The notes under the pieces are model-generated. The model made no database searches and was not told where the DNA came from. It saw nothing but the letters and a program-made list of their open reading frames with translations. A program made the position numbers and the translations under genes. DNA of 64,000 nt. Source: Anolis carolinensis. Taxonomy: Eukaryota. Position 1 is the stretch's first letter; each line of letters begins with the position of its first letter. The DNA is taken from the NCBI RefSeq assembly GCF_035594765.1, contig NC_085844.1, positions 226,192,107 to 226,256,106 on the forward strand. The letters are read 5' to 3'. Below are positions 6,721 to 57,400 of the stretch, one piece after another.

Positions 6721-8781
6721 TCTAGGATTCAAACTATGGACTCCGGAGCTGTAACCCAATGTTGAAGCCACTCCACCACATTAACTCTGTGACATATGAA
6801 AGGAATACATCACATTACCTCCTCTGACCTGCTCTGAATCTCTAGGCTATTTCAAACTCTTATAATTATAGATTTCAGAGAATGAACATGGATCAGCCTT
6901 CATGCAAGACATTGGCTTTGCTCCTGAGCTGTAGCCTCCTTCCTATGAGGTTCAGATTTTGAAGTTATTTTAATGCCTATGGTACATTAATGCCTATGGT
7001 GCATTAAATTGTTGTTTTTAACTGCCTAATGTAATTAAGGCTTCTTCTAGTGCTCTTCAGCTATCTCTCTTCCCAAATACACATACAAGGAGTTCAGCCT
7101 TATATCAGTTCATGCTGAACAAAGATCTTCCATAATTCCTTTCCAGTCTTCCCTTGGCAGTAGGCCTTTTGGATGACCTGAGCCCATCCTCTGCTCTCCT
7201 TCATCTTATATTTGGATAACTTCGTAACCTATCTGTTTAAGAGGACTGTTGTCCTTCTGCCAGCTCTGCTGCCTTTGCTCCTGAAGCATCATCTCAATCT
7301 CTCTGTTTTTTTGTTTTTTGTTTTGTTTCCTTCTGCAAGTCCAGACTCAGCTAGACTTGGCAGGCTTTCCTCATGACCAGTGTTTAAATAAGAAGAGCCT
7401 GCGGAAGAAACATAGAGAGTGCTTGCCTTTTTAAATCCCTTGAAACAGATGGCAAAGAGATGGAGCTGGCTGCTGGGATGTCAAGACTAGAATGAGGATT
7501 TGAGGCCCTTTCACACTACACAATTATAGTGTCATTATCCAATTGAGTCCCATATCACTCGCCTATAGTTTTTTGTAGTTTAGGATAGGGTATTTAAATT
7601 TATTATCTAAAGACTTCTAGCACCTTGCTAATCCACAAGACCCAGGATTTCATAGGATCTATAGATAACAGTTGCTATAAAAGCAATTATAATATAGTGC
7701 CATCAATATGCATGGTACATCACAGAATAAAACAACAAAAAGACAGCCTTCCTAAAGATGTACTACCTACCTACCTACCTATCAGTCTATGTATGTATCT
7801 ATGAATAAGAAGGATTGATACAAATATAAAAGTAATACAATCTGTGAAACAAATTACAGTATATGAATATACAGTACATTCAAAAACCCACATGATACAC
7901 TATAAAACAAAATATATAAGAAAATGAAAGTCAATTAAATTAAAAGCTTAGAAAGGCAACAAATGAAGTTCACACACATTCAAGGAGACAATTCCAGGAA
8001 TATAGAGCAGCAAGTGAAAAAGACTGAAACAAAGCCAAAACAGAAGGAACTCTTGCTTGAATTAGAAGCCTAAAGTTCCTAGAACAAAGCTGGTAAAGAG
8101 AAACAAAGGCTGAAAGATAGGGGAGAACTGGGTCATGTAGAGTTTCAAAAAATAAAACAAGAAACCTGTGTATATGTGTGCCTTTAAAAAAAACTCCATG
8201 ATTTTCATTTCAAGTACACCCAAAAGTCATTTTGCTCGGTCTCTTCATGGAAATACAGCCTATAGCATCTGTAAAGTGGCAAATATATCTCTTTTACAAG
8301 ATCAGCTATGCTGCAAAACTGATTTTCTTCACAACCTCTGAGGATGCGTGCTAAAGATGTGGGTGAAATGTCAGGAGATAATGCTTCTTGAACATGGCCA
8401 TACAGCCTGGAAAACTCACAGCAACTTAATTTTTCTAGTTTGATAAGAGGTATAGGAACCTTTCTTCTTTTTAATCCAGGTATTTTCTTGTGGCAAACTG
8501 CGAAGATACTGATGTTTTTAAATGTATTCGTAACTCTATATTGAAGTCCTCCTTAAAAAAAACAACTAATTCCAGTACAATCTGAATGTCACCACTGTAT
8601 TTCGTAATTAAGCTTACACTCGCAAACCTTTTCAATGGAAGAACGGTCCTGTGGTCAGGATTTCTTTACAAATATGCTGCCTAGAAGTTAAACTCAGAAG
8701 TTCAACTAGGCTTATTCTCAAGTAAATCAATGATGGATTGTGCATGTATATATCTGACTTCATATGTTACAGCGATATTTA

Positions 8782-9128
8782 CAAGTTGAATATTCCTTAT
8801 CTGTAATACTCGGGACCAGAAGTGTCTGATATTTTGGATTTTTTTCAGATTTTGGAATGCCTATATTTGCACTTAAATACCTACATACTGAGATATCTTG
8901 TAGATGGGGTCCAAGTTGAAAAACAAAATTCATTTATGTTTCGTATGCACTTTAAAACCCATAGTTGGAAGTTAACTTTATACAATACTTTTGATAATTT
9001 TGTGCATGAAACAAAAATGATGTGTTCCGAACTATCAGAAAGCAAAGATATCATTACCTCAGACACACATGTGGACAATTTTCATTTAGTTCACATTTCA
9101 GGATTCTGGATAAAAGATTCCCAACCTG
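8782..9128. mobile_element. Tigger/pogo-like MITE
   Basis: TA-flanked, degenerate CAGGTTGAGTATCCCTTATC-type TIRs; related cluster at about 56180-56869. Confidence 0.7.
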
Positions 9129-9787
9129 TACCAATTTTAAAATCTTCCTTGAAATCTTAATAATTATAATAATAAAGCTTTATTTATATCCTACCCCCTC
9201 TCCCCAAAGGGACTTGGGCGGCTTGATTCTGCCAGTCTCCTATGGGGTCACACAAAAATACACACAAGCTGAACCTCATTGTTAGTCCTGACTACAGCAT
9301 ATCTATTGAATCAGTGGTGTTGACTTACATGTTGCAATTCAACAATTCATTCAGCGAGTCTATGCTAGTTGAAATGAATGTATAGGATTCAGGAATCCAC
9401 TCTAAGATTGGAGGATCCCAGACCGATCGCATGTAATAATTATATTTTGTTCTGCAAACTTTTCCTAACACAGAATTGGAAAAAAAGATGAAAAACTTTG
9501 ACTTGTTGTTTCAGATAGTTCACTCTTATTTAGGTCAACAGACATGGCCCCTGTTTCTTCAACTGAAGAACTGAAGAAAGCAACATATGTTGAAATCCAC
9601 CACGTGTACAGCCTACAAATGCATTTTGGACCAGGGCATAAAGGTCTTCATGCCAGATCCAACCCTCATGTGTGTGTGAGATAGTTATGCCCTCATTGTA
9701 GACTGCCCTGCCCACATCTCAATTTCTTCTGTACTCTTTCTCATCGGCAGCAAGAAAAGGAGAGAGGATAATAACTCATGTACTCAC

Positions 9788-16200: not shown

Positions 16201-19200
16201 TTGGGTAGGTTGGAAGCCCCCAGTGGTGCAGTAGGTTAAACCCTTGTGCTGGCAGGACTTATGACTAGAAGGTTGGGTTGCTGACCTGAAAGTTGCCAGT
16301 TCGAATCCAACCCAGGGAGAGCGCAGATGAGCCCCCACTATCAGCTCCAGCTCCATGCAGGGACATGAAAGAAGTCTCCCACAAGGATGGTAAAAACATC
16401 AAAATATCCGGGCGTCCCCTAGGCACTGTCTTTGCAGACAGCCAATTCTCTCATACCAGAAGTGACTTGCAGTTTCTCATGTCACTCCTGACATGAAAAA
16501 AAATGAGTAGGTGTAGCTGCTGCATAGCAGAGCGCTTTAAGTACCTCCCCAGACTACAAATCCCAGGATTCCATTGGAAATTGTCATGGCACAGTGTATA
16601 TAACCACTGCAATTATGCACCACGGATGGACCCTATGTCTCCAAGAGGAGTTCAAGAAAATGAGCACCAAAAAAACCATTTCACCAAGGGAAAAATGACA
16701 TGTGAGTGACTTCATCTGAGGATAGTTCACACTATTCTGCTGCCAGGAAAATTCCTTACAAAAAGTGTGGAGAAGAACTGTCTGAGAAAATGAGTACAAT
16801 TCTCAATTTTAAAAGATGCTCATTTTTGTTCCAATTTTCCTTTCCTCTCTCTTTACTGTTCTTCCTCCAGACACAACATTGTAAAGGAGACAGTTTAGGT
16901 TTCTTTCAGAAGGTGGCTATAAACAACACAGACACCCATGCAAATACAGGGCTGGATATTTTGAGAAGCCAAACTGGCAGGGCAGACATGGATCCATACT
17001 GAAGTGGTGTAGCAGGCCATTCATTATGGGCTGGAAATGCCTTGCCACAACTCAACATAGGACCAGGAGGTGTTCCACCTCAGGCTGGCTTAACACCTAC
17101 GGGGAGGAGCAAATGAAGGGGTTGTATTCACAGACGTGCCAGACGCTTCAGCAAAGTCCTGTCACCACCACAGGGATGATTCATGGGCGGTGAGGAGGAA
17201 AGGAGCTTTACCTTTCCTTAAGAGGCTGCTCTTGGTACAATACCAAGTGCCCTGTGGAAAGCTGGTAAGGAAGGTTTCAGGAGCCCAGAAGATCTGTCTC
17301 ATCTCCCCATGAGACCAATAAACACCAAGCTGACGATGGGATAAAACTGAGCTTAGACAAGTAGCATTTTTTAATTGCAGTTTTAAGAATCTCCCAGCCA
17401 ACCCGACCAGCATGCCTCCTGGTGGATTCTGACAATTGCAGGCTTAAAAGTGACTTTTCTAGGGTCTGGAAATAAACCTGATGATTTGTTATATTTTAAT
17501 ACTACAGTAGAGTCTCACTTATCCAAGCTAAATGGGCCGGCAGAAGCTTGGATAAGCGAATATCTTGGATAATAAGGAGGGATTAAGGAAAAGCCTATTA
17601 AACATCAAATTAGGTTATGATTTTACAAATTAAGTATCAAAACTTCATGTTATACAACAAATTTGGTAGAAAAAGTAGTTCAATACGCAGTAATGCTATG
17701 TAGTAATTACTGTATTTAGGAATTTAGCACTAAAATATCACAATATATTGAAAACATTGACTACAAAAATGGCTTGGATTATCCAGAGGCTTGGATAAGC
17801 AAGGCTTGGATAAGTGAGACTCTACTGTACTTAATGGTGACTTTCTTAATGTATTCTGATTTTAATTGTAAGGTGCTCCAGGAAGATTTGAATCCTGACA
17901 ACAAAGCTTCGATATATCCTTTTAAAAAGTCACCATCTTCTTTATTTATATACTGTCCTATTTCCCCAAGAGGACTCACAGCAGTTTCCAACATATACAA
18001 AGTATTCAATTGCCAATAGAAGACCATGCATAGAAGACCAATTATGATTCTAAAGACCTCAAAAGTAATTGACTACTATTATAGTCACTTTTTAAACATT
18101 AATTTATTTTTTTCAACATAATTTTATTTAAAATATTACAGAGTTACATGTTTCTGGTCTGTGATGCAAAATACTAAGAAATGCTGTAACTATCAACATA
18201 ACTGAAGTTATAGTTGCATCATAAAGGGAGGAACCTCCTCTCTAGCAGAGTTACAAACATAGTCTATTTTTTTCTATGTGTTTATTATTTTTAAAAGGCA
18301 TTAATTGCAAGTAACTGGTTGTTTTTTAAAGCTTACTCCCAATTTCTGATTACATATGTGATTTTTCAATGAACAAACAAAAAAAGAGAAGAAAATGTAA
18401 GGCCTATGTAAGATTATATTTCCTTTCCAAATGTGGATTCAAGTTAGTTGGCCAACATTTGATTTAAAAACAGCCTTTTCTCTGTAAAGTAGTGATTCTA
18501 ACTGTAACTCACACTAGCCATCCTTTAGTAGAAATTCCTTGTGCAAGTATCAGATCCAACATTCCTTTTGTCTCGTTGTCGCATTTTAAATCATACTGTC
18601 TCCCAGCATTGTCAATTTTCTGTCTCTTACTTCTTCCAGCCACCTAACTGAGCTGGAATTGATGACTGCTTCCATGGCAGATGGTGCAGTGGAAAAAACA
18701 GACAGTGCTTCTTAGGAAGAAAACAAGATTCAGTCAGTCTGCTTTAATGGGGGGGTAGGATTGGTATCTTTGGAGATTATACAAATCACAGATTTCAATC
18801 AGGGATAGGAATCCTTTCACTTTTCTTATTGTCGGTCTACAACTCCTATCAGAAATTCCAGTATAGCTAATAGTAGAGTAATGTAGAAACTGTAGTCAAA
18901 CACAATTTAGAAAACCATAATATCCCTACATGTTACATAGAGTGAATCTACACTTTAGAATTAATGCAGGTTGACACCACTTTAATGGACATGGCTCAAT
19001 GCTATGAACTCCTGGGAATTGTAGTTTGGTGAGGCACCAGCACTCTTTGGCAGTGAAGGATAAATACTTTGCAACTCCCATGATCCCATAGCATTGAGTC
19101 AATGCGGTTCTCCTCCCTCTTATTAACATTTGCCTTAAAGGATTTCTTGTTTCTGAGCCCCATGCCACTTAATGGGTAATTTTTTTTAAGTCAGGTTGCA

Positions 19201-22200
19201 TTCTGATGAACAGCAAGAACTTCAGGCTGAAAAGAGTCAATCCTATACTGGCTGGGGGCTTCTGTGAGCTTCAAGTTCTTGTCTGGGGCATATGAGACAT
19301 CTTGCGAGATCACATGGATCATTAAAGAAGGTAATAATACTAGATGAGGTGGAAATCAGTAGGAAAAGAATATTACAGGTGGATGGCTTCAATAATGGAA
19401 GCCACAGCCCTGAGTTTGCAAGATCTGAGCAGGGCTGTCTGAGATTTTTCATTCATAGGGATGCTATAAGTCAAAGCAAGACTTGACAACAATATGTGGT
19501 GGTGGGTGGTTGCTTCTAAATTGTTGGAGTAGTAGATCACTGGATTTTAGTTTGAACTTCAAGCAAACTATTCAACGTGTCAAGCTTGATCTCCAGACTC
19601 GGTCCAGCACCTTGGATAGCTCCTTTCAATTCAAACTGTGAGTACTGAAAAGGACAGCTTAAATTCTGCAAAGGCCCAATTTCTGTCTAATCTTGGAAGC
19701 TAAACAGGGCAAGGCACACTGCAAACAGTGCTATAAGTTATATTCCAGAGGATGTACTGGAGAAAACCATAGTTGAGTATTCTTTGCTTAAGAAAACGAC
19801 AGAGAATAGACCAAAATTCTCCCTGCCATAATGGGATAGTTGAAGGAAATGTAAATGTTAATTTAAATAATTACAGTATTATAACTCAAAACTACTGGTA
19901 TATACCTGGGTGTAATGGCTGCAGACAGAGCCACTGCATTTGGAAGGGCAGCTGGGCTTGCATTCATAGGGATAAGGAAAGGCGTAGTGCTGCTTTTCAT
20001 AATACCAGGATTTCACAAGGTCCACAACTGAATTATACCTGCAGAGAGTCACATACAAAGCACATATTATTCATTTAGCTTTCAAAAAGATATTCCAGTT
20101 AATACAATCTGCCAGTATATGTCTCCAATTCTCAATGCATTTGATTTGTTGCTGGTAATGTGGAGGTATTGGGGAAAGCTTCAAAATATTCCTGAAACTC
20201 CAGACCTGTGTTTTCGGGGCAACGTAGACAGCAGAATCAGGTCTGATTTGAACAGGTCCATCGTCGTTTTGAAGTACTGCTGCCTTCCCCTTTCCCCTGT
20301 ACTCATTACCACAGAGAAAAGGGGACAGATTGTGCTTTGTGTGAGCTTCTGGCAGTTGCAGGAGCTGTGTGCTAATATTAGTAGAGGCACTTGTGCAGGA
20401 GTATTGGCCCTCTACTTCTCCCTGGTCACCTCCACTAATGTCAGCATGAGGTGTCCATGATGACCCCAAGCTCATATGGAGCTCTGCTGCTCTCTGGGCA
20501 TGGTGATGGCAACATGGATCCACAAAAGTTAAACCTGCAAATGTGGAGGATGAGCTGTTTTTTTTCTTCCAGGCCAGAAAGAATGTATTTGAAGGGCTCT
20601 CCAGTCCAGCTATTCTGATTACCAGGGGACACTGCTTACCTGCCAGAGTGGATGGCAAGGTTTTGACCAATGTATTTCATCAATTGTGGAGGTCCATGCT
20701 CCCATATACACTGTTTTGCCCATGCTTCGGCAGATCTGGCAAGTCTTTCATCCCACACCTAGTCATGAAAAAGATCAAGAACAAAGATGAGACAAGGTAC
20801 AAATAGCGAATAGGCTGCTGGTCAAGTACAGTAATTCGTTCCATACTGTCAAACAAATATTTGTCAAACAGCAATAGAAACATCATTTGGCCCTAAAGAA
20901 TTTGTTATTAATAATTAGAGTTGTACTGATGGCTGGAGAACCTGTTGTTGTTGGTTGTTATTAGCAGTGGCCAGTGTATTCCTTGAAACTACTGTTCCTA
21001 GAATCATCCAGATACAAAGCCAGGTAATCACACACTGACTGGGAATTCTAATTCACATAAGTAACTTAGTTTTGGTAAATGTTTAGGGCTGGCAATGGTG
21101 AGCAAGAGCCAAAAAGCAGTCTTTTCTTTCTTAATATGTCTTTCCTTACTTTCTGATTCTCCTTTCCCTCTTTTGATCCATCTCCCTTTATCCAACACTT
21201 CCCTGTTTCTTCCTGTCCATAAAATTTGGTCTTGCCAGATGTCTAATTTCACTGCTATATGATCAACAGATGTCTTGCTGCTCCCTTGAATTGGCTTAAT
21301 CTAAAAGCATTGAGATAACATTTAATGATATGACAATGCAATGCTTGATATTTATAACTGGTCCTCCACATCTGCAGATTTTACTTTTGCTGATGTGATT
21401 ATTTGCAGAGGTGATTGAAATGTTCTCTCCAGGATTCTCTAGGCTAGTGGTTCTCAACCTATGGATCTCCAGATGTTTTGGCCTTCAACTCCCAGAAATC
21501 CTAAGCTAGTAAACTGGCTGGGATTTCTGGGAGTTGTAGGCCAAAACACCTGGGGACGCACAGGTTGAGAACCACTGCCCTAGGCCCACCACAGAGTCAT
21601 GCTGGAAGCTCACACAGAGTCATGTTAGATGGCCTAGGCATAACTGCAGAAGACTAACCAACCCCTCTAACAAGGTTTCAGCAAAGTTCTACAAGACACA
21701 GCCAGATAACATGGTGAAAAATAAGACAGAGCAGGGAATTGTATCTTGCATGACTGGCCGTGCCTGCTGGGATGCTCTGTCTGCTGAACATAATTTTGAT
21801 GCTTTACCCTTCCTTCATTTCCATGGGATACATTTTCAGAATTAGCAATGACAATGTGAGGTTCCTATGAAGACACAGAAACTGAATTATATTAGACTAT
21901 CCTTCTATTTAACGTAACTAGTGATTAGTTTCTTGGAATTACTAAATTTTTCCTGTGGGTTCCTGCAGTTTTAATAGCTGTCTGACAGGCAGAAAACTAG
22001 TGAAGATTTACACAGCACAGAGATGCAATAATGGAAAACAGTGTACTTGCTGATTCTGCCAAACCCCTAGTCTCCTTTGGCGGAGAGATTTGGTTGGGAA
22101 AAAATTGTATTCTATTTTGTAACCTCAGTTACAAAATAGAACACCACTATTCTCCAGAGATACCCATGAGGTGAATGCAGAAAACAAAATATATAAACCA

Positions 22201-30910: not shown

Positions 30911-32257
30911 AAGGATTGGGAAATCATGTAAGCCATGTCATAGACACTGAGCAAATTAGTAAATTACTTGTCAGGAAGTTGCTTGGAAAATTGGTCTCTG
31001 TCATTTTCCTCACTCCCATCAAATTATGCCCATATTCTTTGTTTATTCTCACTTTTTAAAGTATATCACACTTTAGCTAAGAAGGTTTTCAAAATTATGC
31101 TCTACCGAACCTTTAAAAATCATTGATTTTACCCAAAGATCTGCACTTAAAACATGACCCCACCACTTACTTGTGGAAAGTTTCTTCCAAGAAATATTAC
31201 TTTTCTTTTTTTCAAGTCTTCATTTCACTTTTTTTCTATATTTATTTTTAAACCTGTATTTTATTTGCATATTATCCTGCAAATATTTATATACTATGTG
31301 GTGTGGTGGTTTGAGCGTTGGGCTATGACTCTGGCTACCAGGGATCAAATTCCTGCTCAGCCATGGAAACTCACTGGCAAGAGAGGGTAATCTGACCAAG
31401 GTCACCCAGGGGGTTTCCAGGGCGTAGTAAAAATTCAAATTCTGGTCTCCAGAGTCATAGTCCTACACTCAAACCACTACACTGTGGTAAGTTGGCTCAT
31501 ACTATGAGTACAGCTAAAGCGAGATTGGAGCACTGTCTCTAAATATCTCCATGCTCCTGGTCGGATTGCATGCAAATATCTGAAATAAGACTTGTAAACA
31601 TGTTCAGCTAAACATGCCTACATGGTTTTCAAGGTCATGAACCAAACCTTTATCCTATTTCCAAATGCAGAAGCTTTGTAAGCATGTTGAACGACTTCAC
31701 TTGCATAATGCCATTCTCAGAACATGAATATTTTTAACATGGAGGGTTGAGGACATCTGGGAACAAGGTTTGCATTGTTGCCCATTTCTTTTCGTAACTT
31801 TAACTGTATGCATCTGATGGTGCGAAAATGTATCTGAAATCAGGTGTGTCTAGACCACTTCTATGCTGCCATATAAAATCCAGAATATCTGCTTTGAACT
31901 GGATTATATGGCAGTGTAGACTCATATAATACAGTTCAAAGCAGATAATTTGGATTATATGGCAGTGTAGAATGGGCCTTAGTTTTCATTCCTCACATGT
32001 TCTGGGGTCTTACTTTATGGCCTTCAACTTCAGGGGATTTGCTTCATGGCTTCATTCCTTTGATCCTGGTTCCTAACACACTTCAGGCTGTTGCCAATGT
32101 TCCAGCATGATGACTGTCTTAAAAGGAGCACATTGTTTGCCTATCATTGCTCTGTACTCTGACCAGCAGCAGTTCTCTACCATATTTAGCCACAGACATT
32201 TGGCTACCTGTGAAACAACAATCATTGCCCACCAATCTCACAATACATAATACCCGT

Positions 32258-32680
32258 TGTTCTGTCACGCGCTGGGCCTGTGACTGACTGTCTGTTATAT
32301 AGGACATACGCTTTACGCCCAGCGGGAAGGGTCGTCGAGGAATTTTCCTGAAAAGATGGCCTTGAAGTCTTTAAAGAAATAACAAAGTCTTTATTGACGA
32401 ACAAATAATAAATCTTCAAGGAGTCTTGTCCCACAGGACAGGCTATAGGCTTTGAATAACTGTGAAAACCCTCTTATAACCCCTCCCAGGCTATCTGTTA
32501 TCTGGGCCTAGCTAGTCTGGGACCCACTGCCAACTCCAAGTGCGTCTGGTAGTTGAGTGGACCTACCAGCCAATGGCTTGCAGATGTTTCTGTGCTGTTG
32601 TTCTGTATCCCTGGACAGTCAATATCCCTGGGGTTCTTTAACCTTGGTGCTCTTTATCCCTGGTGGCCTTTATCCCTGGT
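32258..32680 (-). repeat. 3' LTR remnant (R/U5 side only)
   Basis: Nearly identical to 35270-35709; joins gag directly inside the tandem-repeat tract. Confidence 0.9.
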
Positions 32681-34682
32681 GGGGAGTTGCACCACAGCAC
32701 CTGAAGCAGATCCCGGATTTCTTGAGGATCTCGACTTTGTCTGCGTGAGGCTTTCTGGCAAACTCTCTGCAGTCGGCCAAACTGTGGGGCTTTGCATGCA
32801 GTGGGCACAAAACCTCTTTTGGTGTCATCTTGGCATCAGGTAGAGATGGGATGGTCTCTGTAGTCTTGTTTCTTTCAATGCCACTGTCCTTCTCAGGTTT
32901 CTTGGCCTCTTTGATGGGCCTATCCGTCCTTGGAGCCCCATAAAGAGTTGGAAATCCTGTCTGTGGGTCGTTAAGTTGCATGGCAGCATTTGTAACAAAT
33001 TCCACAAGATGGGTGAATGGTGGGTAGACCTGATGATTAGCCTGCTTGTATCTGAAGACTTCCCTGCCCCATTCTTCCTGCAAGAAAAAGGGCAGTCTTT
33101 GAGTGATGGCAGTTTGGGACAAGTGCTGGTCCAGGCAGGCAAACCCTGGAAGCTGTGGGTTTCCCTTAGCTGACTGGAGCTCAACCAATAAGTCTGATAG
33201 GTCCCAAAGCTGTTCAAAGTCCTTAGGTTTGAGCACCGGGAACTTATGAAGTCTGTCCATCAGCGAGGCTTCAATTTGGGTGCTGGACCCGTAACACTGG
33301 TTAAGCCTTGTCCATGCAGTGTCCAGTGCTCTTTCTGGTTGGTCGATGAGGGCTGAGAAGATTCTTCTCACCTGGTGGGCTGATGTTGGACCAAGCCAGG
33401 CAACCATAAGAGTTAGTTCCTCCTCAGAGGTGAGTCCTAAATTCTGTATGGCACGATGAAAGGTCTTCTTCCAAAGTAGGAAATCTTCTGGCCTGTCAGA
33501 GAATTTCTCCACACCTTTGTCCCTCAAATCCTTCTTCGGGTTCCTGAACAGAGACTCGAGCTGTGACTGAGGAATCTGAAGAAACGGAAGGGGTATTTGG
33601 TCAGGGGTAAAGGTGAAGTTCTTCTCAAACCTAGAAGGTCCCTTCAGAGGAACATCTGTGATCTCAGGTATGGGTGAAACCCTGATTTCTATTGGCCTTG
33701 CAACCTGAGTTGGTGGCTGTGGGCTCCTGGCCCTGGATTCTTCGACCTGCCTGCGTGGCACGATGACGCTGTCCACCTGCACCAGCTTGTTGTCTTGGAA
33801 GCCAACGTGGGCTGGCAGAAGAGGTGTGCTTGGTGGTGTCGGTAGGCGGTTGACGTTTTCCTGAGACAGCTCTCCTTGCAGCGCCTTCGCCAGGATGTTG
33901 GCACAAACCCTCTTCTGAGCTGCATCTTGTTGGACACGTGTGAGCTTTAACTTTGCTTCTAATTCAGTTTGAGCCTGCTCGAAGTTCAGGCTTAGCTCTG
34001 CTGCTGCTGCCTCAGCTTCCGCCTCGAGGATCTTCTCCTGTAGCTCCATGCGCTTGGCTTCCTTGTTGTAGAAGGCCGCCATCGATGAGGAGCTGCTCCT
34101 TGAAACAGAAGATCCAGGCGCAGAGTCATGTCTGCTGCCAAACTTCTTGCTGGGGTGGCTGTGTTTGCTATGGGCAGACGTGCCTCCCTGACTATCCTTC
34201 AAACATAAGGCCTGTAGGGAATGTTTAAGGAGCTCAGGGCTCGCGCTACGGGTGGGAGAAGCTTGATCATCCCTTTCCCTTCTGGGGGAGGGGCTGAAGT
34301 CAGCTACATGAAACAGGTGTGCATAACTAGATTCCCTATGCTTAACACTATTTAAAAACTGTAGAGCTCTAAGATCTGATTCCTGGCTGTTTATTTTGCC
34401 AAGCACCTGGGTGATGCTATCCACTAGGGCTCTCCATTCGTTAACCAGAACCTTGAGATTAGCCCTGATACACTGAGACTCCCTAGTGTCTTTAGAACCT
34501 TCTAGTTGACCATCAAGGTTAACAATAGAAAGCCAGATGCTTTCAGCCTTATTTGTCAGCTGAGCCTCTTCTAGCAAAAGCAGGTCTAAAGCCTTTTGGG
34601 TAGGATGAATTGAACCCTGAGATCTCAAACTATTAGCTTTTCCCTCTGATTTTGCAGAGCCTAGAGTATGAGCCATAATCAC
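32670..34682 (-). CDS. gag: BEL/Pao Gag-like protein, 670 aa, C-terminally truncated by fusion to the LTR
   Basis: Uninterrupted ORF: coiled-coil N-half, DUF1759-like capsid motif FSDRPEDFLLWKKTF, Cys-His boxes CPLHAKPHSLADC and CFRCCGATPH (cut); the stop codon is supplied by LTR sequence. Confidence 0.88.
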   Translation of the reverse strand: MIMAHTLGSAKSEGKANSLRSQGSIHPTQKALDLLLLEEAQLTNKAESIWLSIVNLDGQLEGSKDTRESQCIRANLKVLVNEWRALVDSITQVLGKINSQESDLRALQFLNSVKHRESSYAHLFHVADFSPSPRRERDDQASPTRSASPELLKHSLQALCLKDSQGGTSAHSKHSHPSKKFGSRHDSAPGSSVSRSSSSSMAAFYNKEAKRMELQEKILEAEAEAAAAELSLNFEQAQTELEAKLKLTRVQQDAAQKRVCANILAKALQGELSQENVNRLPTPPSTPLLPAHVGFQDNKLVQVDSVIVPRRQVEESRARSPQPPTQVARPIEIRVSPIPEITDVPLKGPSRFEKNFTFTPDQIPLPFLQIPQSQLESLFRNPKKDLRDKGVEKFSDRPEDFLLWKKTFHRAIQNLGLTSEEELTLMVAWLGPTSAHQVRRIFSALIDQPERALDTAWTRLNQCYGSSTQIEASLMDRLHKFPVLKPKDFEQLWDLSDLLVELQSAKGNPQLPGFACLDQHLSQTAITQRLPFFLQEEWGREVFRYKQANHQVYPPFTHLVEFVTNAAMQLNDPQTGFPTLYGAPRTDRPIKEAKKPEKDSGIERNKTTETIPSLPDAKMTPKEVLCPLHAKPHSLADCREFARKPHADKVEILKKSGICFRCCGATPHQG

Positions 34683-35269
34683 AAATTAAGCAAACAAAAT
34701 GGCAATGCAGTTACAAAAGCACACTCAAAACTTATTACTTTAAAGCAAGAAATAAGAACACAGCAATAAATCAGTTGCAAACAAACTCCTGCAAGCACCA
34801 AGGAGTTTGCAAAACCCCTTTTGCAGGCACCTGGTAGATGAAGTAGCAAGCACTGTGCAGACTTAGTCCTGATGCTACTGGAACAAAATGTTGCAATTTG
34901 CTGTGGAAAGCTTGCTTCTGCAGAGCGAATGTAGCAAATGCTGTGCAGGACTTGCTTCAAAAAGGGCGGGAAAGGCTTGCTTCTGTTGCTGGATCAAAAT
35001 GTTGCAAACTGTTGTGGAAGGCTTGCTTTTGCAGAGGCTGCTGCAAATGTAGCAAACTTGGAAGAAAGGAGGAATGCACCGGCCCCTCCCTTCTGGTCAC
35101 ATGGGCTGTCTTCCAAGATGGCCGAAAATGCAGGAACACATTCACATGGATAGCAGGTAATGGAGGCTTGGAATGGCCCTGAACTGGCTCCCTTATGCAC
35201 TGTCTTTTAGCTTTTTCAAGTCCTTTACTTTACTCCCGGGTGGCAGAAGCCACCAGCTACCTATTTCAA

Positions 35270-36399
35270 TGTTCTGTCACGCGCTGGGCCTGTGACTGAC
35301 TGTCTGTTATATAGGACATACGCTTTACGCCCAGCGGGAAGCCAGGGGCCTAAAGAAGGGTCGTCAAGGAATTTTCCTGAAAAGATGGCCTTGAAGTCTT
35401 TAAAGAAATAACAAAGTCTTTATTGACGAACAAATAATAAATCTTCAAGGAGTCTTGTCCCACAGGACAGGCTATAGGCTTTGAATAACTGTGAAAACCC
35501 TCTTATAACCCCTCCCAGGCTATCTGTTATCTGGGCCTAGCTAGTCTGGGACCCACTGCCAACTCCAAGTGCGTCTGGTAGTTGAGTGGACCTACCAGCC
35601 AATGGCTTGCAGATGTTTCTGTGCTGTTGTTCTGTATCCCTGGACAGTCAATATCCCTGGGGTTCTTTAACCTTGGTGCTCTTTATCCCTGGTGGCCTTT
35701 ATCCCTGGTATTCTTTAACCCTGGTGTTCTTTATCCCCGGTGGTCTTGAATTTCTCCACACCTTTGTCCCTCAAATCCTTCTTCGGGTTCCTGAACAGAG
35801 ACTCGAGCTGTGACTGAGGAATCTGAAGAAACGGAAGGGGTGTTTGGTCAGGGGTAAAGGTGAAGTTCTTCTCAAACCTAGAAGGTCCCTTCAGAGGAAC
35901 ATCTGTGATCTCAGGTATGGGCGAAACCCTGGTTTCTATTGGCCTTGCAACCTGAGTTGGTGGCTGTGGGCTCCTGGCCCTGGATTCTTCGACCTGCCTG
36001 CGTGGCACGATGACGCTGTCCACCTGCACCAGCTTGTTGTCTTGGAAGCCAACGTGGGCTGGCAGAAGAGGTGTGCTTGGTGGTGTCGGTAGGCGGTTGA
36101 CGTTTTCCTGAGACAGCTCTCCTTGCAGCGCCTTCTTTATCCCCGGTGGTCTTGAACCCTGGTGGTCTTGAACCCTGGTGGTCTTGAAATAGGAAGCCTT
36201 TTATGGGACGAGCTGGTCTATGTCCTACAGCTGAATTTCCCAAGAGAAACTAACTTAAAAATGGCTCCTTCCCTCCCAGAGCCCTGAACAGGGGGCGGAA
36301 CCAAACTTAATGGTGATTGACAGGTGGCCTGTCCTATGGCTGCAAACATTTGCAGCAAGAAAGTAAAATAGAAGGTTCTGGTACAGCTGTACCAGCACA
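35270..36399 (-). repeat. 5' LTR of the BEL element, containing a 388-bp inserted gag duplicate (35748-36135)
   Basis: Matches the left LTR remnant; contains a GC box, a CATAAAA motif (36205-36199), ~15-bp tandem repeats and AATAAA (minus strand, about 35419-35424). Confidence 0.9.
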
Positions 36400-54450: not shown

Positions 54451-57400
54451 TGGAGAACCACTCAATCTGGGCGGGATGGTAGGGGGAGAGGTCATCTTTT
54501 GGTGGGAGAGCGAGGATAATGTTCAGGGATTTTCTATTCCTTTTTTGAAGGGGGTGGGGATACCATTGATGTCAATGAAGTTCTTGCTCTCCTACTTTAA
54601 GAAGGATCAGGCGGACTCCCCTAAGGGTGATAAAGCATGATAAAGCAGACATGGGCAAGAAAAAGTGGCTGAAAGAAATTAAAATGTAAGAGAAAACTAT
54701 TCACGAAACCAATATAGTATTATTTTTTATTTTTTTATTCATTTATTTACTATGTTTATATCCCACTCTTCTCACCCCAGAGCAGCTTACAAGTTATATG
54801 TACATACAATATTTTATATTATTAGCATAGCACAATATTAGTATTATATATTACTATATTGTACTATACCACTATACTGCAATATTATTAGTAATATTAC
54901 ATGTAATATATATTATTATATTGTATTACATTATGTTATCAATATTATATGTATATACAATATATTTTATTATTAGCATAGCACAATATTAGTATTATAT
55001 ATAACTATATTGTACTATACCACTATACTGCAATACTATTGGTAATAGTACATGCAATATATAATATATAATTATAATATAAGAATTAGTATATAAGAAT
55101 AGGGCCATAGATCCTATCATCATGAAAGGAAGGTTTTTCCTTTCCTCTTTATCTCTCAAACCACCTGAATTCATCCCTGAGAAAAAGGCCTATTTGAAAA
55201 GGGAGGGAGAATAATTAAAAGTTATCAACCCTTGTCTGTGATTGAGCATGGAAAATATTGCTTACATGCACCTAAGTTCACTTTGGCTGCACCCAGACTG
55301 AGTAAAAGGAGTAGAAAGTCCTTTTCCTTCCAGTTCTTTACAATTTTATTTTGGAGATTCAGGGCCTCATCACACTAGAGCTTGGATTCATTTTCAGTCC
55401 ACTTTAAATCCACTTTAGGGAGGGGGCTTTAAACAGCTCAGCCAGCCAGTCCTGGACCTCACCAAACTACAAACCCCAGAATTCTGCAGGAGGCAGAAAC
55501 AAGATTTAAAGTGGATTCATGCTCTAGTGTGATGAGGCTATCATACATGTTTTCCTTAGGCCAGAATAGCTGACCAAAGGCTCCTGGTATGATCACAGGC
55601 TTTTGTATCAGCTCTCCAGGTCAGTTTATTTTTATCCCAGTATCATGCTGAAAAAGAACAGAAACAAAATATGAAGATTTTCTGCCTACCTGGATTCACC
55701 CCTACTTTAGAAATCAAATCCAAGCCAGTGTTTAGGGCATTGGTGAGAGGAGCATATTGAGCTTGAATCGCCTGATATTAGATAATGAGAATATTTCTTT
55801 AACTGAAAATACAAGTAAATGAGGTTTTTTAAAAACCATATTTTACTGGGCTAACTGCTATAGGGCAGTACTTATAGAAACAATGTTTCTCAGCTCTCTG
55901 ATTCTCTGTTAGGAATTGTGGGAGTTGGAGTCCAAAACACCTGGAGGGCCCAAGTTTGCCCATACCTTCTCTATACTGTAGAATTAATTCAGTTTGCCAG
56001 CACTTGCCAACTGCTATGGCTCAATGGTATGGAGTCCTGAGATGTGTAGTTTGGTGAGGCACCACCGCTCTTCAGCAGGAAAGGCTAAGGGTCTTGTAAG
56101 ACTACAACTCCCAGCATTCCCTAGCTTTTCAAGTGGTGTCAAATGGCATCAATTCTACAGTGTTAATGCAAGCATATCCTAAAGGTCATTTTATACCCAG
56201 ATTTTAAAAATTGTTTTATACATTTTTACACAAAAGTTTGTGTGCATCAAACCACCACAAAAGAAAAGTATCACTATGTCAGCCACCTGTATGGGCAATT
56301 TTTGAGCATTTTCAGCCTTTGGGATTCTTGATAAGGGATGCTCAAACCATGATGATGATGATAATAATAATACAGGTTGAGTATTTTTTTTAGGACCTGA
56401 ACTGCTTTAGATTTTAGATTATTTTAGATTCTGGAGTACATCTATTTGTAGAAATGTACATAATGAGATATCATGGAGATGGGACCCAAGTCTAAACTTG
56501 AAATTTGTGTATACACACACCGGCTAAAGGAAATTTTATGCACAGAAGTTTGAAGTATTTTGTGCATGAAAAAAGGTTTCAGCACAATGAACCATCAGAA
56601 AAGAAAGGTTTCAGCTCTCCATGTGGACAATTGTGGATTTTATGGTTCTGGATAAGGTTGAGTATCTCTTATCCCAAATGCTTGGGTCCAGAAGTGTTTC
56701 GGGTTTTGTAATATTTGCATATGTATGTATAATGATATAAATTGGATATGGGATCCAAGTCTAAACATGAAATTCAACCATTAGAAAGCAAAAAGTGTCA
56801 TTAATCTCAGCCACTCATGTGGACAGTTTTGGAGCATTTGGGATTTCCAGATGAGGAATACTCAACCTGTACAGTAAAGTGACAGTTCTTAAATATATCA
56901 GGAATTCCAAAGCAGCATGAAGACACCAGTTGTCATATACATAACACAAATAGTAGCCCTAATAACTTATTTCAATAATGGATTTTCTCTGGAGTTCATG
57001 CCTTTATGAAACTGGGTCCATACTGCTTAGTTTTATCTACAATGAGTAGCAGTGACTCTGGAGAATTTCAGGCAGGGCTCTTTCCCAAGCTGAAAACTGC
57101 AATACAGTCAAGCTGTGTTCTTTTATATATAAATTGTATGCTTTACATTAAGGTATAGCTTCATCTCTAATTCAGGTTGGGGCCACATATTCTACTCCTA
57201 ACCTAGATGGAAGTTCAGGCCCATTTGATCCTAATTATCTTTTGGCTTGGCTAAAACTAAGTACAGTAGAGTCTCACTTATCCAAGCCTCGCTTATCCAA
57301 GCTTCTGGATTATCCAAGCCATTTTTGTAGTCAATGTTTTCAATATATCGTGATATTTTGGTGCTAAATTCGTAAATACAATAATTATAACATAACATTA

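What the first reader, a model, noticed from the sequence alone, without database searches (positions are those of the whole stretch)
35255..36205. BEL/Pao retrotransposon with no tRNA PBS but an LTR-complementary primer site: possible self-priming
Seen in sequence: on the element (minus) strand the 5' LTR ends ...GACAGAACA and is followed immediately by TTGAAATAGGTAGC (35269-35256), not by the TGG of a tRNA-CCA primer site. Inside the LTR the same strand reads GCTTCCTATTTCAA (36197-36184), its reverse complement at 13/14, with the 10 junction-proximal bases perfect. The 3' end of this would-be primer lands exactly on the first base after the LTR, so extension would start by copying the terminal ACA. 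A perfect 10-mer arising by chance in about 700 bp has probability of roughly 700/4^10, below 0.001. Established: this geometry is how Tf1/sushi-group Ty3/gypsy elements self-prime, using the 5' end of their own mRNA. Inference: this BEL/Pao family may self-prime; I am not aware of that being shown for BEL/Pao, but this needs a literature check. Caveat: CATAAAA lies only 2 nt upstream of the complementary segment. If that is the TATA box, the segment is in U3 and priming would need a different route, such as the 3' LTR copy in the RNA.
Basis: partly seen in the sequence, partly recalled or inferred. Interest (0 to 1): 0.8.

Follow-up and report, generated by a model that had tools for sequence, protein, structure and literature searches.

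The report
Candidate self-priming BEL/Pao retrotransposon, defective copy
A lizard BEL/Pao retrotransposon has no tRNA primer site; the bases right after its 5' LTR pair with a segment inside that LTR, and two sister families keep the pairing with different sequences, so the group probably primes reverse transcription with its own RNA, which was not found described for BEL/Pao.

Summary
On the minus strand the 5' LTR ends ...GACAGAACA at 35270. The next 14 nt (35269-35256) are the reverse complement, at 13/14, of 36197-36184 inside the LTR, and the 10 junction-proximal bases are perfect (shuffle P about 0.001-0.002).

The element (36399-32258, TSD ACGGG) is a gag-only, pol-less derivative. Its 5' LTR carries a 388-bp gag fragment. 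Its 3' LTR has lost its first ~290 nt, including the complementary segment.

An intact-LTR relative (L001) has the same pair 475 nt apart. Two sister anole families (gag 46-47% identical) have unrelated post-LTR sequences, and each matches its own LTR flush with the junction (9 and 10 nt). Foreign LTRs match only 4-6 nt. A hairpin follows in all three, and MFE folds form the helix. No tRNA-type site exists. More distant relatives give only weak 7-8 nt matches.

Self-priming is the best reading (about 0.6). The transcription start is unmapped, so Tf1-like geometry is not shown.

The scan found this before on other DNA of the same genome (s1-528321, s1-535995, s1-568249). No held paper links BEL/Pao with self-priming.

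The parts
36400..36404 (-). 5' target-site duplication ACGGG
   Evidence: The same 5-mer follows the 3' LTR at 32257-32253.
35270..36399 (-). 5' LTR, TGTGCTGG...GACAGAACA, 1130 bp. It is chimeric; the related copy L001 has a 691-bp LTR without the gag insert.
   Evidence: BLAST and alignment to L001 8668-9358. A Logan contig joins 35738 to 36189, skipping the insert.
36250..36322 (-). Promoter-like block upstream of the complementary segment: TGTCAATCACC (36322-36312), CCGCCCCC (36300-36291), CCATTTTTAAGTTAG (36264-36250).
   Evidence: Read from the sequence. Similar motifs, in the same order, lie upstream of the complementary segment in L002 and L003. Promoter function is inferred only.
36184..36197 (-). 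LTR-internal segment GCTTCCTATTTCAA, complementary to the post-LTR 14-mer (perfect over 36193-36184). Proposed 3' end of the self-primer.
36204..36208 (-). TCCCA, the weak distal strand that pairs with CGGGA after the leader hairpin (4 bp here, 5 bp in L001, about 18 bp in L002).
   Evidence: MFE and cofold structures.
36136..36183 (-). Three 16-nt tandem units (GACCACCAGGGTTCAA type) that start directly after the complementary segment.
35748..36135 (-). 388-bp gag fragment inserted in the LTR. It is 99.2% identical to resident gag 33888-33501 and is flanked by a duplicated AAGACCACCGGGGATAAAGAA. The junctions show GAA and TTC microhomology.
35499..35507 (-). TATAAGAGG, an alternative TATA-like box about 75 nt upstream of AATAAA (35424-35419).
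   Evidence: Function is not tested.
35256..35269 (-). Primer-site position: TTGAAATAGGTAGC immediately after the LTR (perfect pairing over 35269-35260).
35239..35254 (-). Leader hairpin GGTGGC-TTCT-GCCACC. Hairpins with other sequences sit at the same place in L002 (AGCGG-TTTTT-CCGCT) and L003 (CTTCT-TTTCC-AGAAG).
32670..34676 (-). gag ORF (ATG at 34676). It has a weak DUF1759 hit and ends inside the first zinc knuckle, where it is fused to LTR repeats.
   Evidence: It is 95% identical to residues 1-670 of P0001. Junction microhomology is CACCA.
32258..32682 (-). 3' LTR, 5'-truncated. It lacks about the first 290 nt, including the complementary segment, has no polypurine tract upstream, and carries a 17-nt deletion.
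32253..32257 (-). 3' target-site duplication ACGGG

Best explanation
This is a young, gag-only, rearranged copy of a green-anole BEL/Pao family that most likely starts minus-strand DNA synthesis with a piece of its own RNA instead of a tRNA.

Proposed mechanism:
- An LTR segment (...CCUAUUUCAA-3') folds back onto the first 10-14 nt after U5. The helix is flush with the LTR end.
- A leader hairpin follows, and then a second, weaker helix.
- A cut after ...CAA would leave a 3'-OH whose first templated base is the last base of the LTR.

What is shown: the complementarity, its flush register, its conservation with different sequences in three anole families, and the lack of a tRNA-type site.

What is inferred by analogy with Tf1: the cut, the enzyme (the element's RNase H), and that the segment lies in the 5' leader (R) of the RNA.

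This copy lacks pol, a polypurine tract and the start of its 3' LTR. It could at best be transcribed, not copied properly.
For: - Flush 10-mer (13/14) in the window and in L001.
- Sister families were found through gag alone, without reference to the primer site. L002: post-LTR GTTTTGAGG pairs with LTR CCTCAAAAC, 9 flush, 12/14, P=0.002. L003: GTGCTGAGAG pairs with CTCTCAGCAC, 10 flush, P=0.001.
- Swap control: own LTR matches 10/9/10 nt, foreign LTRs 4-6 nt.
- Control offsets in the leaders reach the observed length at 0-3 of 210 positions.
- In an unanchored sliding cofold, the LTR windows holding the segment are the best partners of the first 60 leader nt in L001, L002, L003 and L004.
- MFE folds form the helix in 38 of 40 contexts, and also in the window copy across 915 nt.
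- Extended bipartite pairing around a hairpin that is conserved in position but not in sequence.
- None of the three post-LTR sequences begins with TGG. No tRNA or Rfam hit was found.
- 5-bp TSDs fix the LTR ends.
- BEL/Pao identity: DUF1759; Pao protease and DUF5641 in P0001 and other relatives.
Against: - The TSS is unknown. A TATA-like TATAAGAGG about 75 nt upstream of AATAAA would place the segment about 240 nt inside U3 in an intact LTR.
- CATAAAAGG lies only 2 nt upstream of the segment, too close to serve as the TATA box for a start at the segment.
- If the start is upstream, R would be unusually long (about 340 nt), and the 5' poly(A) signal would have to be ignored.
- Perfect pairing stops at 9-10 nt.
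- More distant relatives (L009, L011, L006, L008) have only 7-8 nt flush matches, no better than the swap controls.
- tRNA halves and other small RNAs could not be screened.
- There is no RNA or cDNA evidence. Read laying returned contigs only.
Confidence: 0.6

Rival explanations
1. Self-priming, but from the 3' copy. [quoted passage not shown] It pairs with the site after U5 of the same or the co-packaged RNA and is cut there. The primer is then the 3' end of a long upstream RNA fragment.
For: - The TATA-like box and AATAAA have conventional spacing in the window family. Similar TATA-like motifs lie 90-130 nt upstream of AATAAA in L002, L003 and L004.
- The flush register and the covariation hold equally under this model.
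Against: - It needs an extra template jump across the cut.
- No precedent is known to me.
- A CAAT-like / GC-box / CCATTTT block sits upstream of the segment in all three anole families.
- TATA-like strings are frequent by chance.
Confidence: 0.13
2. A long-range RNA-RNA contact with no priming role (genome cyclisation, dimerisation, packaging or strand-transfer aid, as with Ty1 CYC5/CYC3 or the Ty3 bipartite site). The real primer is some other, unidentified RNA.
For: - The pairing is bipartite and extends about 45 nt in L002, longer than a primer needs.
- In L009 the best LTR-leader pairing is not flush.
Against: - It does not explain why the helix ends exactly at the first base after the LTR in every anole family and in L004.
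- It leaves three families with three different post-LTR sequences and no candidate primer.
- No TGG-type site is present.
Confidence: 0.17
3. A host small RNA (tRNA half, other ncRNA) is the primer, and the LTR match is coincidence or mimicry.
For: Some copia-type elements use internal tRNA fragments (Neumann et al. 2019, PMC6317226, read). I could not screen anole tRNAs.
Against: Three families would need three different host RNAs, and each would also have to match its own LTR flush at 9-10 nt. The per-family shuffle P is about 0.001-0.002.
Confidence: 0.05
4. Chance complementarity.
For: Many windows were read in the first stage, so a single event at P about 0.002 could surface.
Against: It was replicated in two independently retrieved sister families with different sequences, and in swap and offset controls.
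Confidence: 0.02

Closest known systems
Tf1 (S. pombe) and the Tf1/sushi group of Ty3/gypsy elements: self-primed reverse transcription (Lin & Levin 1997, as cited in PMC3601003 and PMC5445492; the mechanism is from established knowledge)
   Same: No tRNA site. The bases after U5 pair with the element's own LTR-derived RNA. The helix is embedded in a larger folded structure. The perfect stretch is 9-11 nt.
   Different: A different superfamily (BEL/Pao). In Tf1 the complement is the first 11 nt of the mRNA. Here the start is unmapped, the pairing continues upstream of the 10-mer, and the span is about 470 nt rather than about 150. Cleavage has not been shown.
Predicted self-primers in plants: Tcn1 chromoviruses and the TAR lineage of Ty1/copia (PMC6317226)
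   Same: Self-priming inferred from sequence alone, outside yeast. This shows the trait recurs across LTR superfamilies.
   Different: Plant Ty3/gypsy and Ty1/copia elements, not BEL/Pao. I did not compare the geometry.
Ty1 CYC5/CYC3 and the Ty3 5'-3' bipartite primer site
   Same: Long-range pairing between the region next to the primer site and LTR or U3 sequence.
   Different: Those elements still use tRNA-iMet. Here no tRNA site exists, and the helix is flush with U5.
tRNA-primed BEL/Pao elements, e.g. Achilles of the olive fly with an 18-nt tRNA-Tyr site (PMC4580426)
   Same: Same superfamily. LTR with TG...CA ends and a primer site directly after the LTR.
   Different: Achilles has a classical tRNA 3'-end site. 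The anole families do not.
[quoted passage not shown]
   Same: Tandem repeats inside a BEL/Pao LTR. In the window family a 16-nt array starts directly after the complementary segment.
   Different: I could not read the paper. Whether the anole repeats lie in R is unknown.

Membership tests
BEL/Pao LTR retrotransposons (Belpaoviridae/Semotivirus) | Gag with the DUF1759 domain and CCHC knuckle(s) | tested here: met
   The DUF1759 hit has E=3.7e-4, which is below Pfam's cut-off. The ORF ends inside CFRCCGATPH. HMMER finds 1860 relatives, and the top hit is 95% identical.
BEL/Pao LTR retrotransposons (Belpaoviridae/Semotivirus) | Pol with Pao-type aspartic protease (PF05380), RT/RNase H, and integrase followed by DUF5641 | tested here: not met
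   This copy has no pol at all. Its 95%-identical relative P0001 carries PF05380 and DUF5641. More distant relatives do too, and some also carry rve. The family membership holds; this copy is a non-autonomous derivative.
BEL/Pao LTR retrotransposons (Belpaoviridae/Semotivirus) | LTRs with TGT...ACA ends and a short target-site duplication | tested here: met
   TGTGCTGG...GACAGAACA with a 5-bp TSD ACGGG. Relatives have 5-bp TSDs: GTCAT, GCCCC, CAGTC, ATATG.
Self-priming LTR elements (Tf1 type, defined by mechanism) | No site complementary to a tRNA 3' end next to the 5' LTR | tested here: met
   The post-LTR sequences begin TTG, GTT and GTG. The only nearby TGG (+15) is part of a hairpin that sister families replace with hairpins of unrelated sequence. 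ARAGORN and Rfam found nothing. tRNA halves were not screened.
Self-priming LTR elements (Tf1 type, defined by mechanism) | Bases directly after U5 complementary to the element's own LTR RNA, conserved through covariation | tested here: met
   Own LTR matches 10/9/10 nt flush in three anole families, against 4-6 nt for foreign LTRs. The evidence is weak (7-8 nt) in more distant relatives.
Self-priming LTR elements (Tf1 type, defined by mechanism) | The complementary segment is the 5' end of the mRNA (start of R) | not testable with these tools
   All runs returned were Logan contigs, which cannot show RNA starts. The promoter motifs are ambiguous.
Self-priming LTR elements (Tf1 type, defined by mechanism) | RNase H cut that frees the primer; strong-stop DNA linked to element RNA | not testable with these tools
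   This needs bench work.
Tf1/sushi clade of Ty3/gypsy (by phylogeny) | Ty3/gypsy-type Gag-Pol, often with a chromodomain integrase | tested here: not met
   The proteins are BEL/Pao type. The resemblance is in mechanism only.

The most novel reading that the evidence does not exclude
The complementary segment lies in U3, with the TSS at the downstream TATA-like box. The primer would then be cut from the 3' U3 of the genomic or co-packaged RNA and annealed next to U5. Reverse transcription would start on a circularised or dimeric genome. That priming geometry has not been described for any retroelement.
Probability: 0.13. Interest if true: 0.85.

Novelty: new variant of a known kind. Interest (0 to 1): 0.62.

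Why it matters
Self-priming has been shown for Tf1. It has been predicted for the Tf1/sushi group and for some plant Ty3/gypsy and Ty1/copia lineages. BEL/Pao would be the third LTR superfamily with it.

That bears on two questions: whether tRNA priming or hairpin priming is ancestral for LTR elements (raised in PMC3601003), and whether such elements escape host defences aimed at tRNA primer sites, such as 3'-tRNA fragments (bioRxiv 10.1101/2025.05.12.650695, listed).

It also matters for annotation. Pipelines that demand a tRNA-type primer site will miss or misjudge these families.

The three anole families provide a ready natural covariation series for experiments.

Tried and rejected
- tRNA site at +15 (TGGTGGCTTCTGCCACC): rejected. 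It is a perfect hairpin, sister families have hairpins of unrelated sequence without TGG at the same place, and its complement lacks a T-arm pattern.
- The search for homologous proteins with gag: no hit at 1e-5. This says little. The exhaustive HMMER search then found 1860 relatives.
- ARAGORN on the window and seven loci: no tRNA, so no local tRNA set to compare with. Rfam: nothing.
- Read laying: contigs only. It gave no RNA starts and no way to phase variants.
- Loci left out because the LTR ends could not be fixed: L005 (no LTR in the contig), L007 (ambiguous LTR end) and L010 (no LTR pair found). L006 and L008 are short Logan contigs with incomplete LTRs. They were read by eye only and are not in the statistics.
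- P0004 had no contig on record.
- Distant relatives L009 and L011: the flush 7-mers are not above the swap controls, and their best LTR-leader pairings are not flush. I do not count them as support.
- Papers not held: Lin & Levin 1997 (PMC1369541) and Xiong et al. 1993 (PMC309473).
- Findings search by sequence: blank.
'Intact LTR' refers to the natural copy L001.

Full report
**1. Observation**

On the minus strand the repeat ends GTGACAGAACA at 35270 and is followed by TTGAAATAGGTAGC (35269-35256). GCTTCCTATTTCAA lies at 36197-36184. The two 14-mers are complementary at 13 of 14 positions. The 10 bases next to the junction are perfect, and the helix ends on the first base after the LTR. In 20,000 dinucleotide-preserving shuffles of the LTR, a flush exact match of 10 or more occurred at P=0.002. 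For the intact-LTR relative the figure was about 0.001.

**2. Anatomy of this copy**

Self-BLAST shows two repeat blocks, 35270-36135 and 32258-33888, that do not behave like simple LTRs. Positions 35270-35709 match 32258-32680. Positions 35748-36135 match 33501-33888, and that stretch lies inside a 670-codon ORF (34682-32670, minus strand). The ORF has a weak DUF1759 hit, the BEL/Pao Gag domain.

A 5-bp target duplication, ACGGG, at 36404-36400 and 32257-32253 shows that 36399-32258 is a single insertion. Comparison with a 94-96% identical element in the anole assembly GCA_035594765.1 (L001, found through protein P0001) gives the intact layout: a 691-bp LTR, the same post-LTR 14-mer, and the same LTR segment at LTR positions 203-216.

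Relative to L001, the window copy differs in three ways:
- It has no pol. Gag is fused, inside its first zinc knuckle, to the LTR's tandem repeats through a CACCA microhomology.
- Its 3' LTR therefore lacks its first ~290 nt, including the complementary segment. There is no polypurine tract, and the 3' LTR also carries a 17-nt deletion.
- Its 5' LTR carries a 388-bp gag fragment (36135-35748, 99.2% identical to the resident gag). The fragment sits between duplicated AAGACCACCGGGGATAAAGAA, with GAA and TTC microhomologies at the junctions.

A Logan contig joins 35738 to 36189 without the insert, so other copies have the plain LTR. The two LTR remnants are otherwise nearly identical (100% over 300 and 72 nt), so the copy is young. 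Three microhomology junctions in a young copy with an intact TSD suggest template switching during one aberrant reverse transcription. That is inference only.

**3. Relatives**

The word-based protein search found nothing. The exhaustive HMMER search with Gag found 1860 proteins. Twelve look-ups gave usable loci, and I chose them without reference to the primer site.

Two further anole families have Gag 46-47% identical to the window's:
- L002: LTR 8263-8978, TSD GCCCC. Post-LTR GTTTTGAGGTCGAT faces LTR AATCATCCTCAAAAC (9 flush, 12/14).
- L003: LTR 16775-17474, with the 5' LTR split by a nested insertion. Post-LTR GTGCTGAGAG faces LTR CTCTCAGCAC (10 flush).

Shuffle P values are 0.002 and 0.001. 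Of 210 control offsets further down each leader, none reaches the observed length in L002 or L003. Three do in L001, and all three belong to one palindromic 12-mer.

In a swap test, each post-LTR sequence matches its own LTR over 10, 9 and 10 nt but foreign LTRs over only 4-6 nt. The three sequences are unrelated to each other.

**4. Structure**

In all three families the 14-mer is followed at once by a 5-6 bp hairpin with a U-rich loop. Its sequence differs between families: GGTGGC/GCCACC, AGCGG/CCGCT, CTTCT/AGAAG.

MFE folds of RNA running from 0-100 nt upstream of the segment to 45 or 150 nt past the LTR form the segment:site helix in 38 of 40 cases for L001, L002, L003 and L004, across 190-480 nt. 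The helix also forms in the window copy across 915 nt, for 3 of 4 start points.

The folds extend the pairing upstream of the 10-mer and downstream of the hairpin:
- about 18 bp in L002 (LTR AGCTGTGCAAGGCTAACTGG with leader TCAGCTAGCTTGCACGGCT);
- 5 bp in L001;
- 4 bp in the window.

In an unanchored scan, the 50-nt LTR windows that contain the segment are the best partners of the first 60 leader nt in L001, L002, L003 and L004. They rank 10th or better of about 650, and every better window overlaps them. The flush register was therefore not imposed by my search.

**5. More distant relatives**

L004, L009 and L011 come from other NCBI assemblies. The Logan contigs L006 and L008 were read by eye. 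All begin GT(A/G)AAAA after the LTR, and all have a TTG(T/C)AG..TTTT(A/C)AC motif in the LTR, 12-130 nt upstream of the poly(A) signal where that signal is on the contig. GTG pairs with CAC in two of them, and GTA with TAC in three.

These flush matches are only 7-8 nt. Their P values are 0.016-0.04, and they are no better than the swap controls. Only L004 shows a clearly best, extended duplex. In L009 and L011 the best LTR-leader pairings are elsewhere and are not flush. I count them as compatible, not as support. The earlier agent's statement about ticks, frogs, fish and molluscs (s1-528321) is thus only partly reproduced here.

**6. What primes?**

A mature tRNA ends in CCA, so a tRNA 3'-end site starts TGG. 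The three families start TTG, GTT and GTG. The TGG at +15 in the window is the hairpin stem. ARAGORN and Rfam find nothing in the element.

A host-RNA primer would require three different host RNAs, each of which also happens to match the family's own LTR. A pure cyclisation or packaging contact would not explain why the helix ends exactly where DNA synthesis must begin, and it would leave the elements without a primer.

The most economical reading is self-priming. The LTR-derived RNA anneals next to U5, is cut after ...CAA, and is extended. As with tRNA primers, the site would be rewritten from the primer in each cycle, which would explain how the pair co-varies.

**7. What remains open**

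Tf1 uses the first 11 nt of its mRNA. Here the start is unknown.
- Upstream of the segment lies a CAAT-like / GC-box / CCATTTT(TAAG) block, and similar motifs precede the segment in L002 and L003. A start there would put the segment and its upstream pairing partner in a 5' leader of about 35-70 nt. R would then be about 340 nt long.
- Alternatively, TATAAGAGG (35507-35499), about 75 nt upstream of AATAAA, is the TATA box. The segment would then be in U3 and present only at the RNA's 3' end.
- CATAAAAGG, 2 nt upstream of the segment, is too close to be the TATA box for a start at the segment. In L001 it reads CGTAAAAGG.

All sequencing runs on offer were Logan contigs, which cannot show RNA ends, so I could not settle this. 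I put Tf1-like or 5'-leader self-priming at about 0.6, priming from the 3' U3 copy at 0.13, a non-priming RNA contact at 0.17, a host RNA at 0.05 and chance at 0.02.

**8. Literature**

- Full-text searches found no held paper that links BEL/Pao with self-priming.
- The two BEL/Pao surveys read do not discuss primer sites at all (PMC3118150, PMC554778).
- One insect BEL/Pao element, Achilles, has a classical tRNA-Tyr site (PMC4580426).
- Self-priming is described for Tf1/sushi and predicted for the plant Tcn1 and TAR lineages (PMC6317226).
- Subscription papers, for example Frame et al. 2001 on BEL-like elements, are not held. Prior description cannot be excluded.

**9. Verdict**

The scan had already noted the same feature on other DNA of this genome (s1-528321 with a follow-up; s1-535995 and s1-568249 as first readings). 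A Tf1/sushi-type self-primer in the same genome was also noted (s1-539926).

What this window adds:
- a defective gag-only copy whose rearrangement junctions all lie in the tandem repeats directly after the proposed cut site;
- the bipartite pairing around a leader hairpin conserved in position;
- own-versus-foreign LTR controls.

Noticed in passing
window 35748-36135 (minus): A 388-bp gag fragment sits inside the 5' LTR. It is flanked by a 22-bp duplication, with 3-nt microhomologies at both junctions. The 104-aa and 110-aa ORFs listed at 35715-36029 and 35911-36243 overlap it. Other copies lack the insert (joint 35738 to 36189 in run X17).
   Followed up: partly
window 32258-32690 (minus): Gag is fused inside its first zinc knuckle to the LTR tandem repeats through CACCA microhomology. 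This removes pol, the polypurine tract and about the first 290 nt of the 3' LTR. A further 17-nt deletion lies between CCTTC repeats. The TSD is nonetheless intact and the LTR remnants are nearly identical. This may be one aberrant reverse transcription with several template switches.
   Followed up: partly
L001 14538-15108: The 3' LTR of the related element lacks about 122 nt (LTR positions ~140-260), including the complementary segment, while its 5' LTR has it. In both elements examined, the 3' LTR has lost this region.
   Followed up: no
window 35667 and 35683 (loose ends of run X4): Contigs from another subfamily read ...GTCCCGTAAAAAGCTTCATATTTCAAG..., a C-to-A change inside the perfect 10-mer, with fewer repeats. 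The post-LTR site of that subfamily is unknown. It would be a within-family test of covariation.
   Followed up: no
window 36148-36400: The first ~250 nt of the LTR have the highest summed contig depth of the whole stretch, 2-3 times that of the rest of the LTR. This part may be shared with other families or with many truncated copies.
   Followed up: no
L001 leader +219 (9577-9588) and LTR positions 43-54: This is the only other long leader-LTR complement (12 nt, ACATTTGCAGCA with TGCTGCAAATGT). It lies in a palindromic TGCAAA..TTTGCA context and is repeated in the leader.
   Followed up: no
L003 4085-9053 and 9275-9340: The 5' LTR of the L003 element is split by a nested insertion of about 5 kb that has its own 415-bp repeats. 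The L003 leader repeats the unit CTGAGAGAAGCCTTCTTTTCCAGAAG two to three times, so the primer-site-like sequence and the hairpin are duplicated.
   Followed up: no
window 36728-36846 and 21437-21583; 36901-36990 and 55449-55538: SINE-like repeats lie just upstream of the insertion, in direct and inverted copies elsewhere in the window. Several other dispersed repeat families and (ATT)n tracts are also present.
   Followed up: no
L001 10001-14464 (P0001): The 1487-aa Gag-Pol of the closest relative shows Pao protease and DUF5641 but no RT hit on record. This fits the scan's earlier notes on RT-less BEL/Pao elements in this genome.
   Followed up: no
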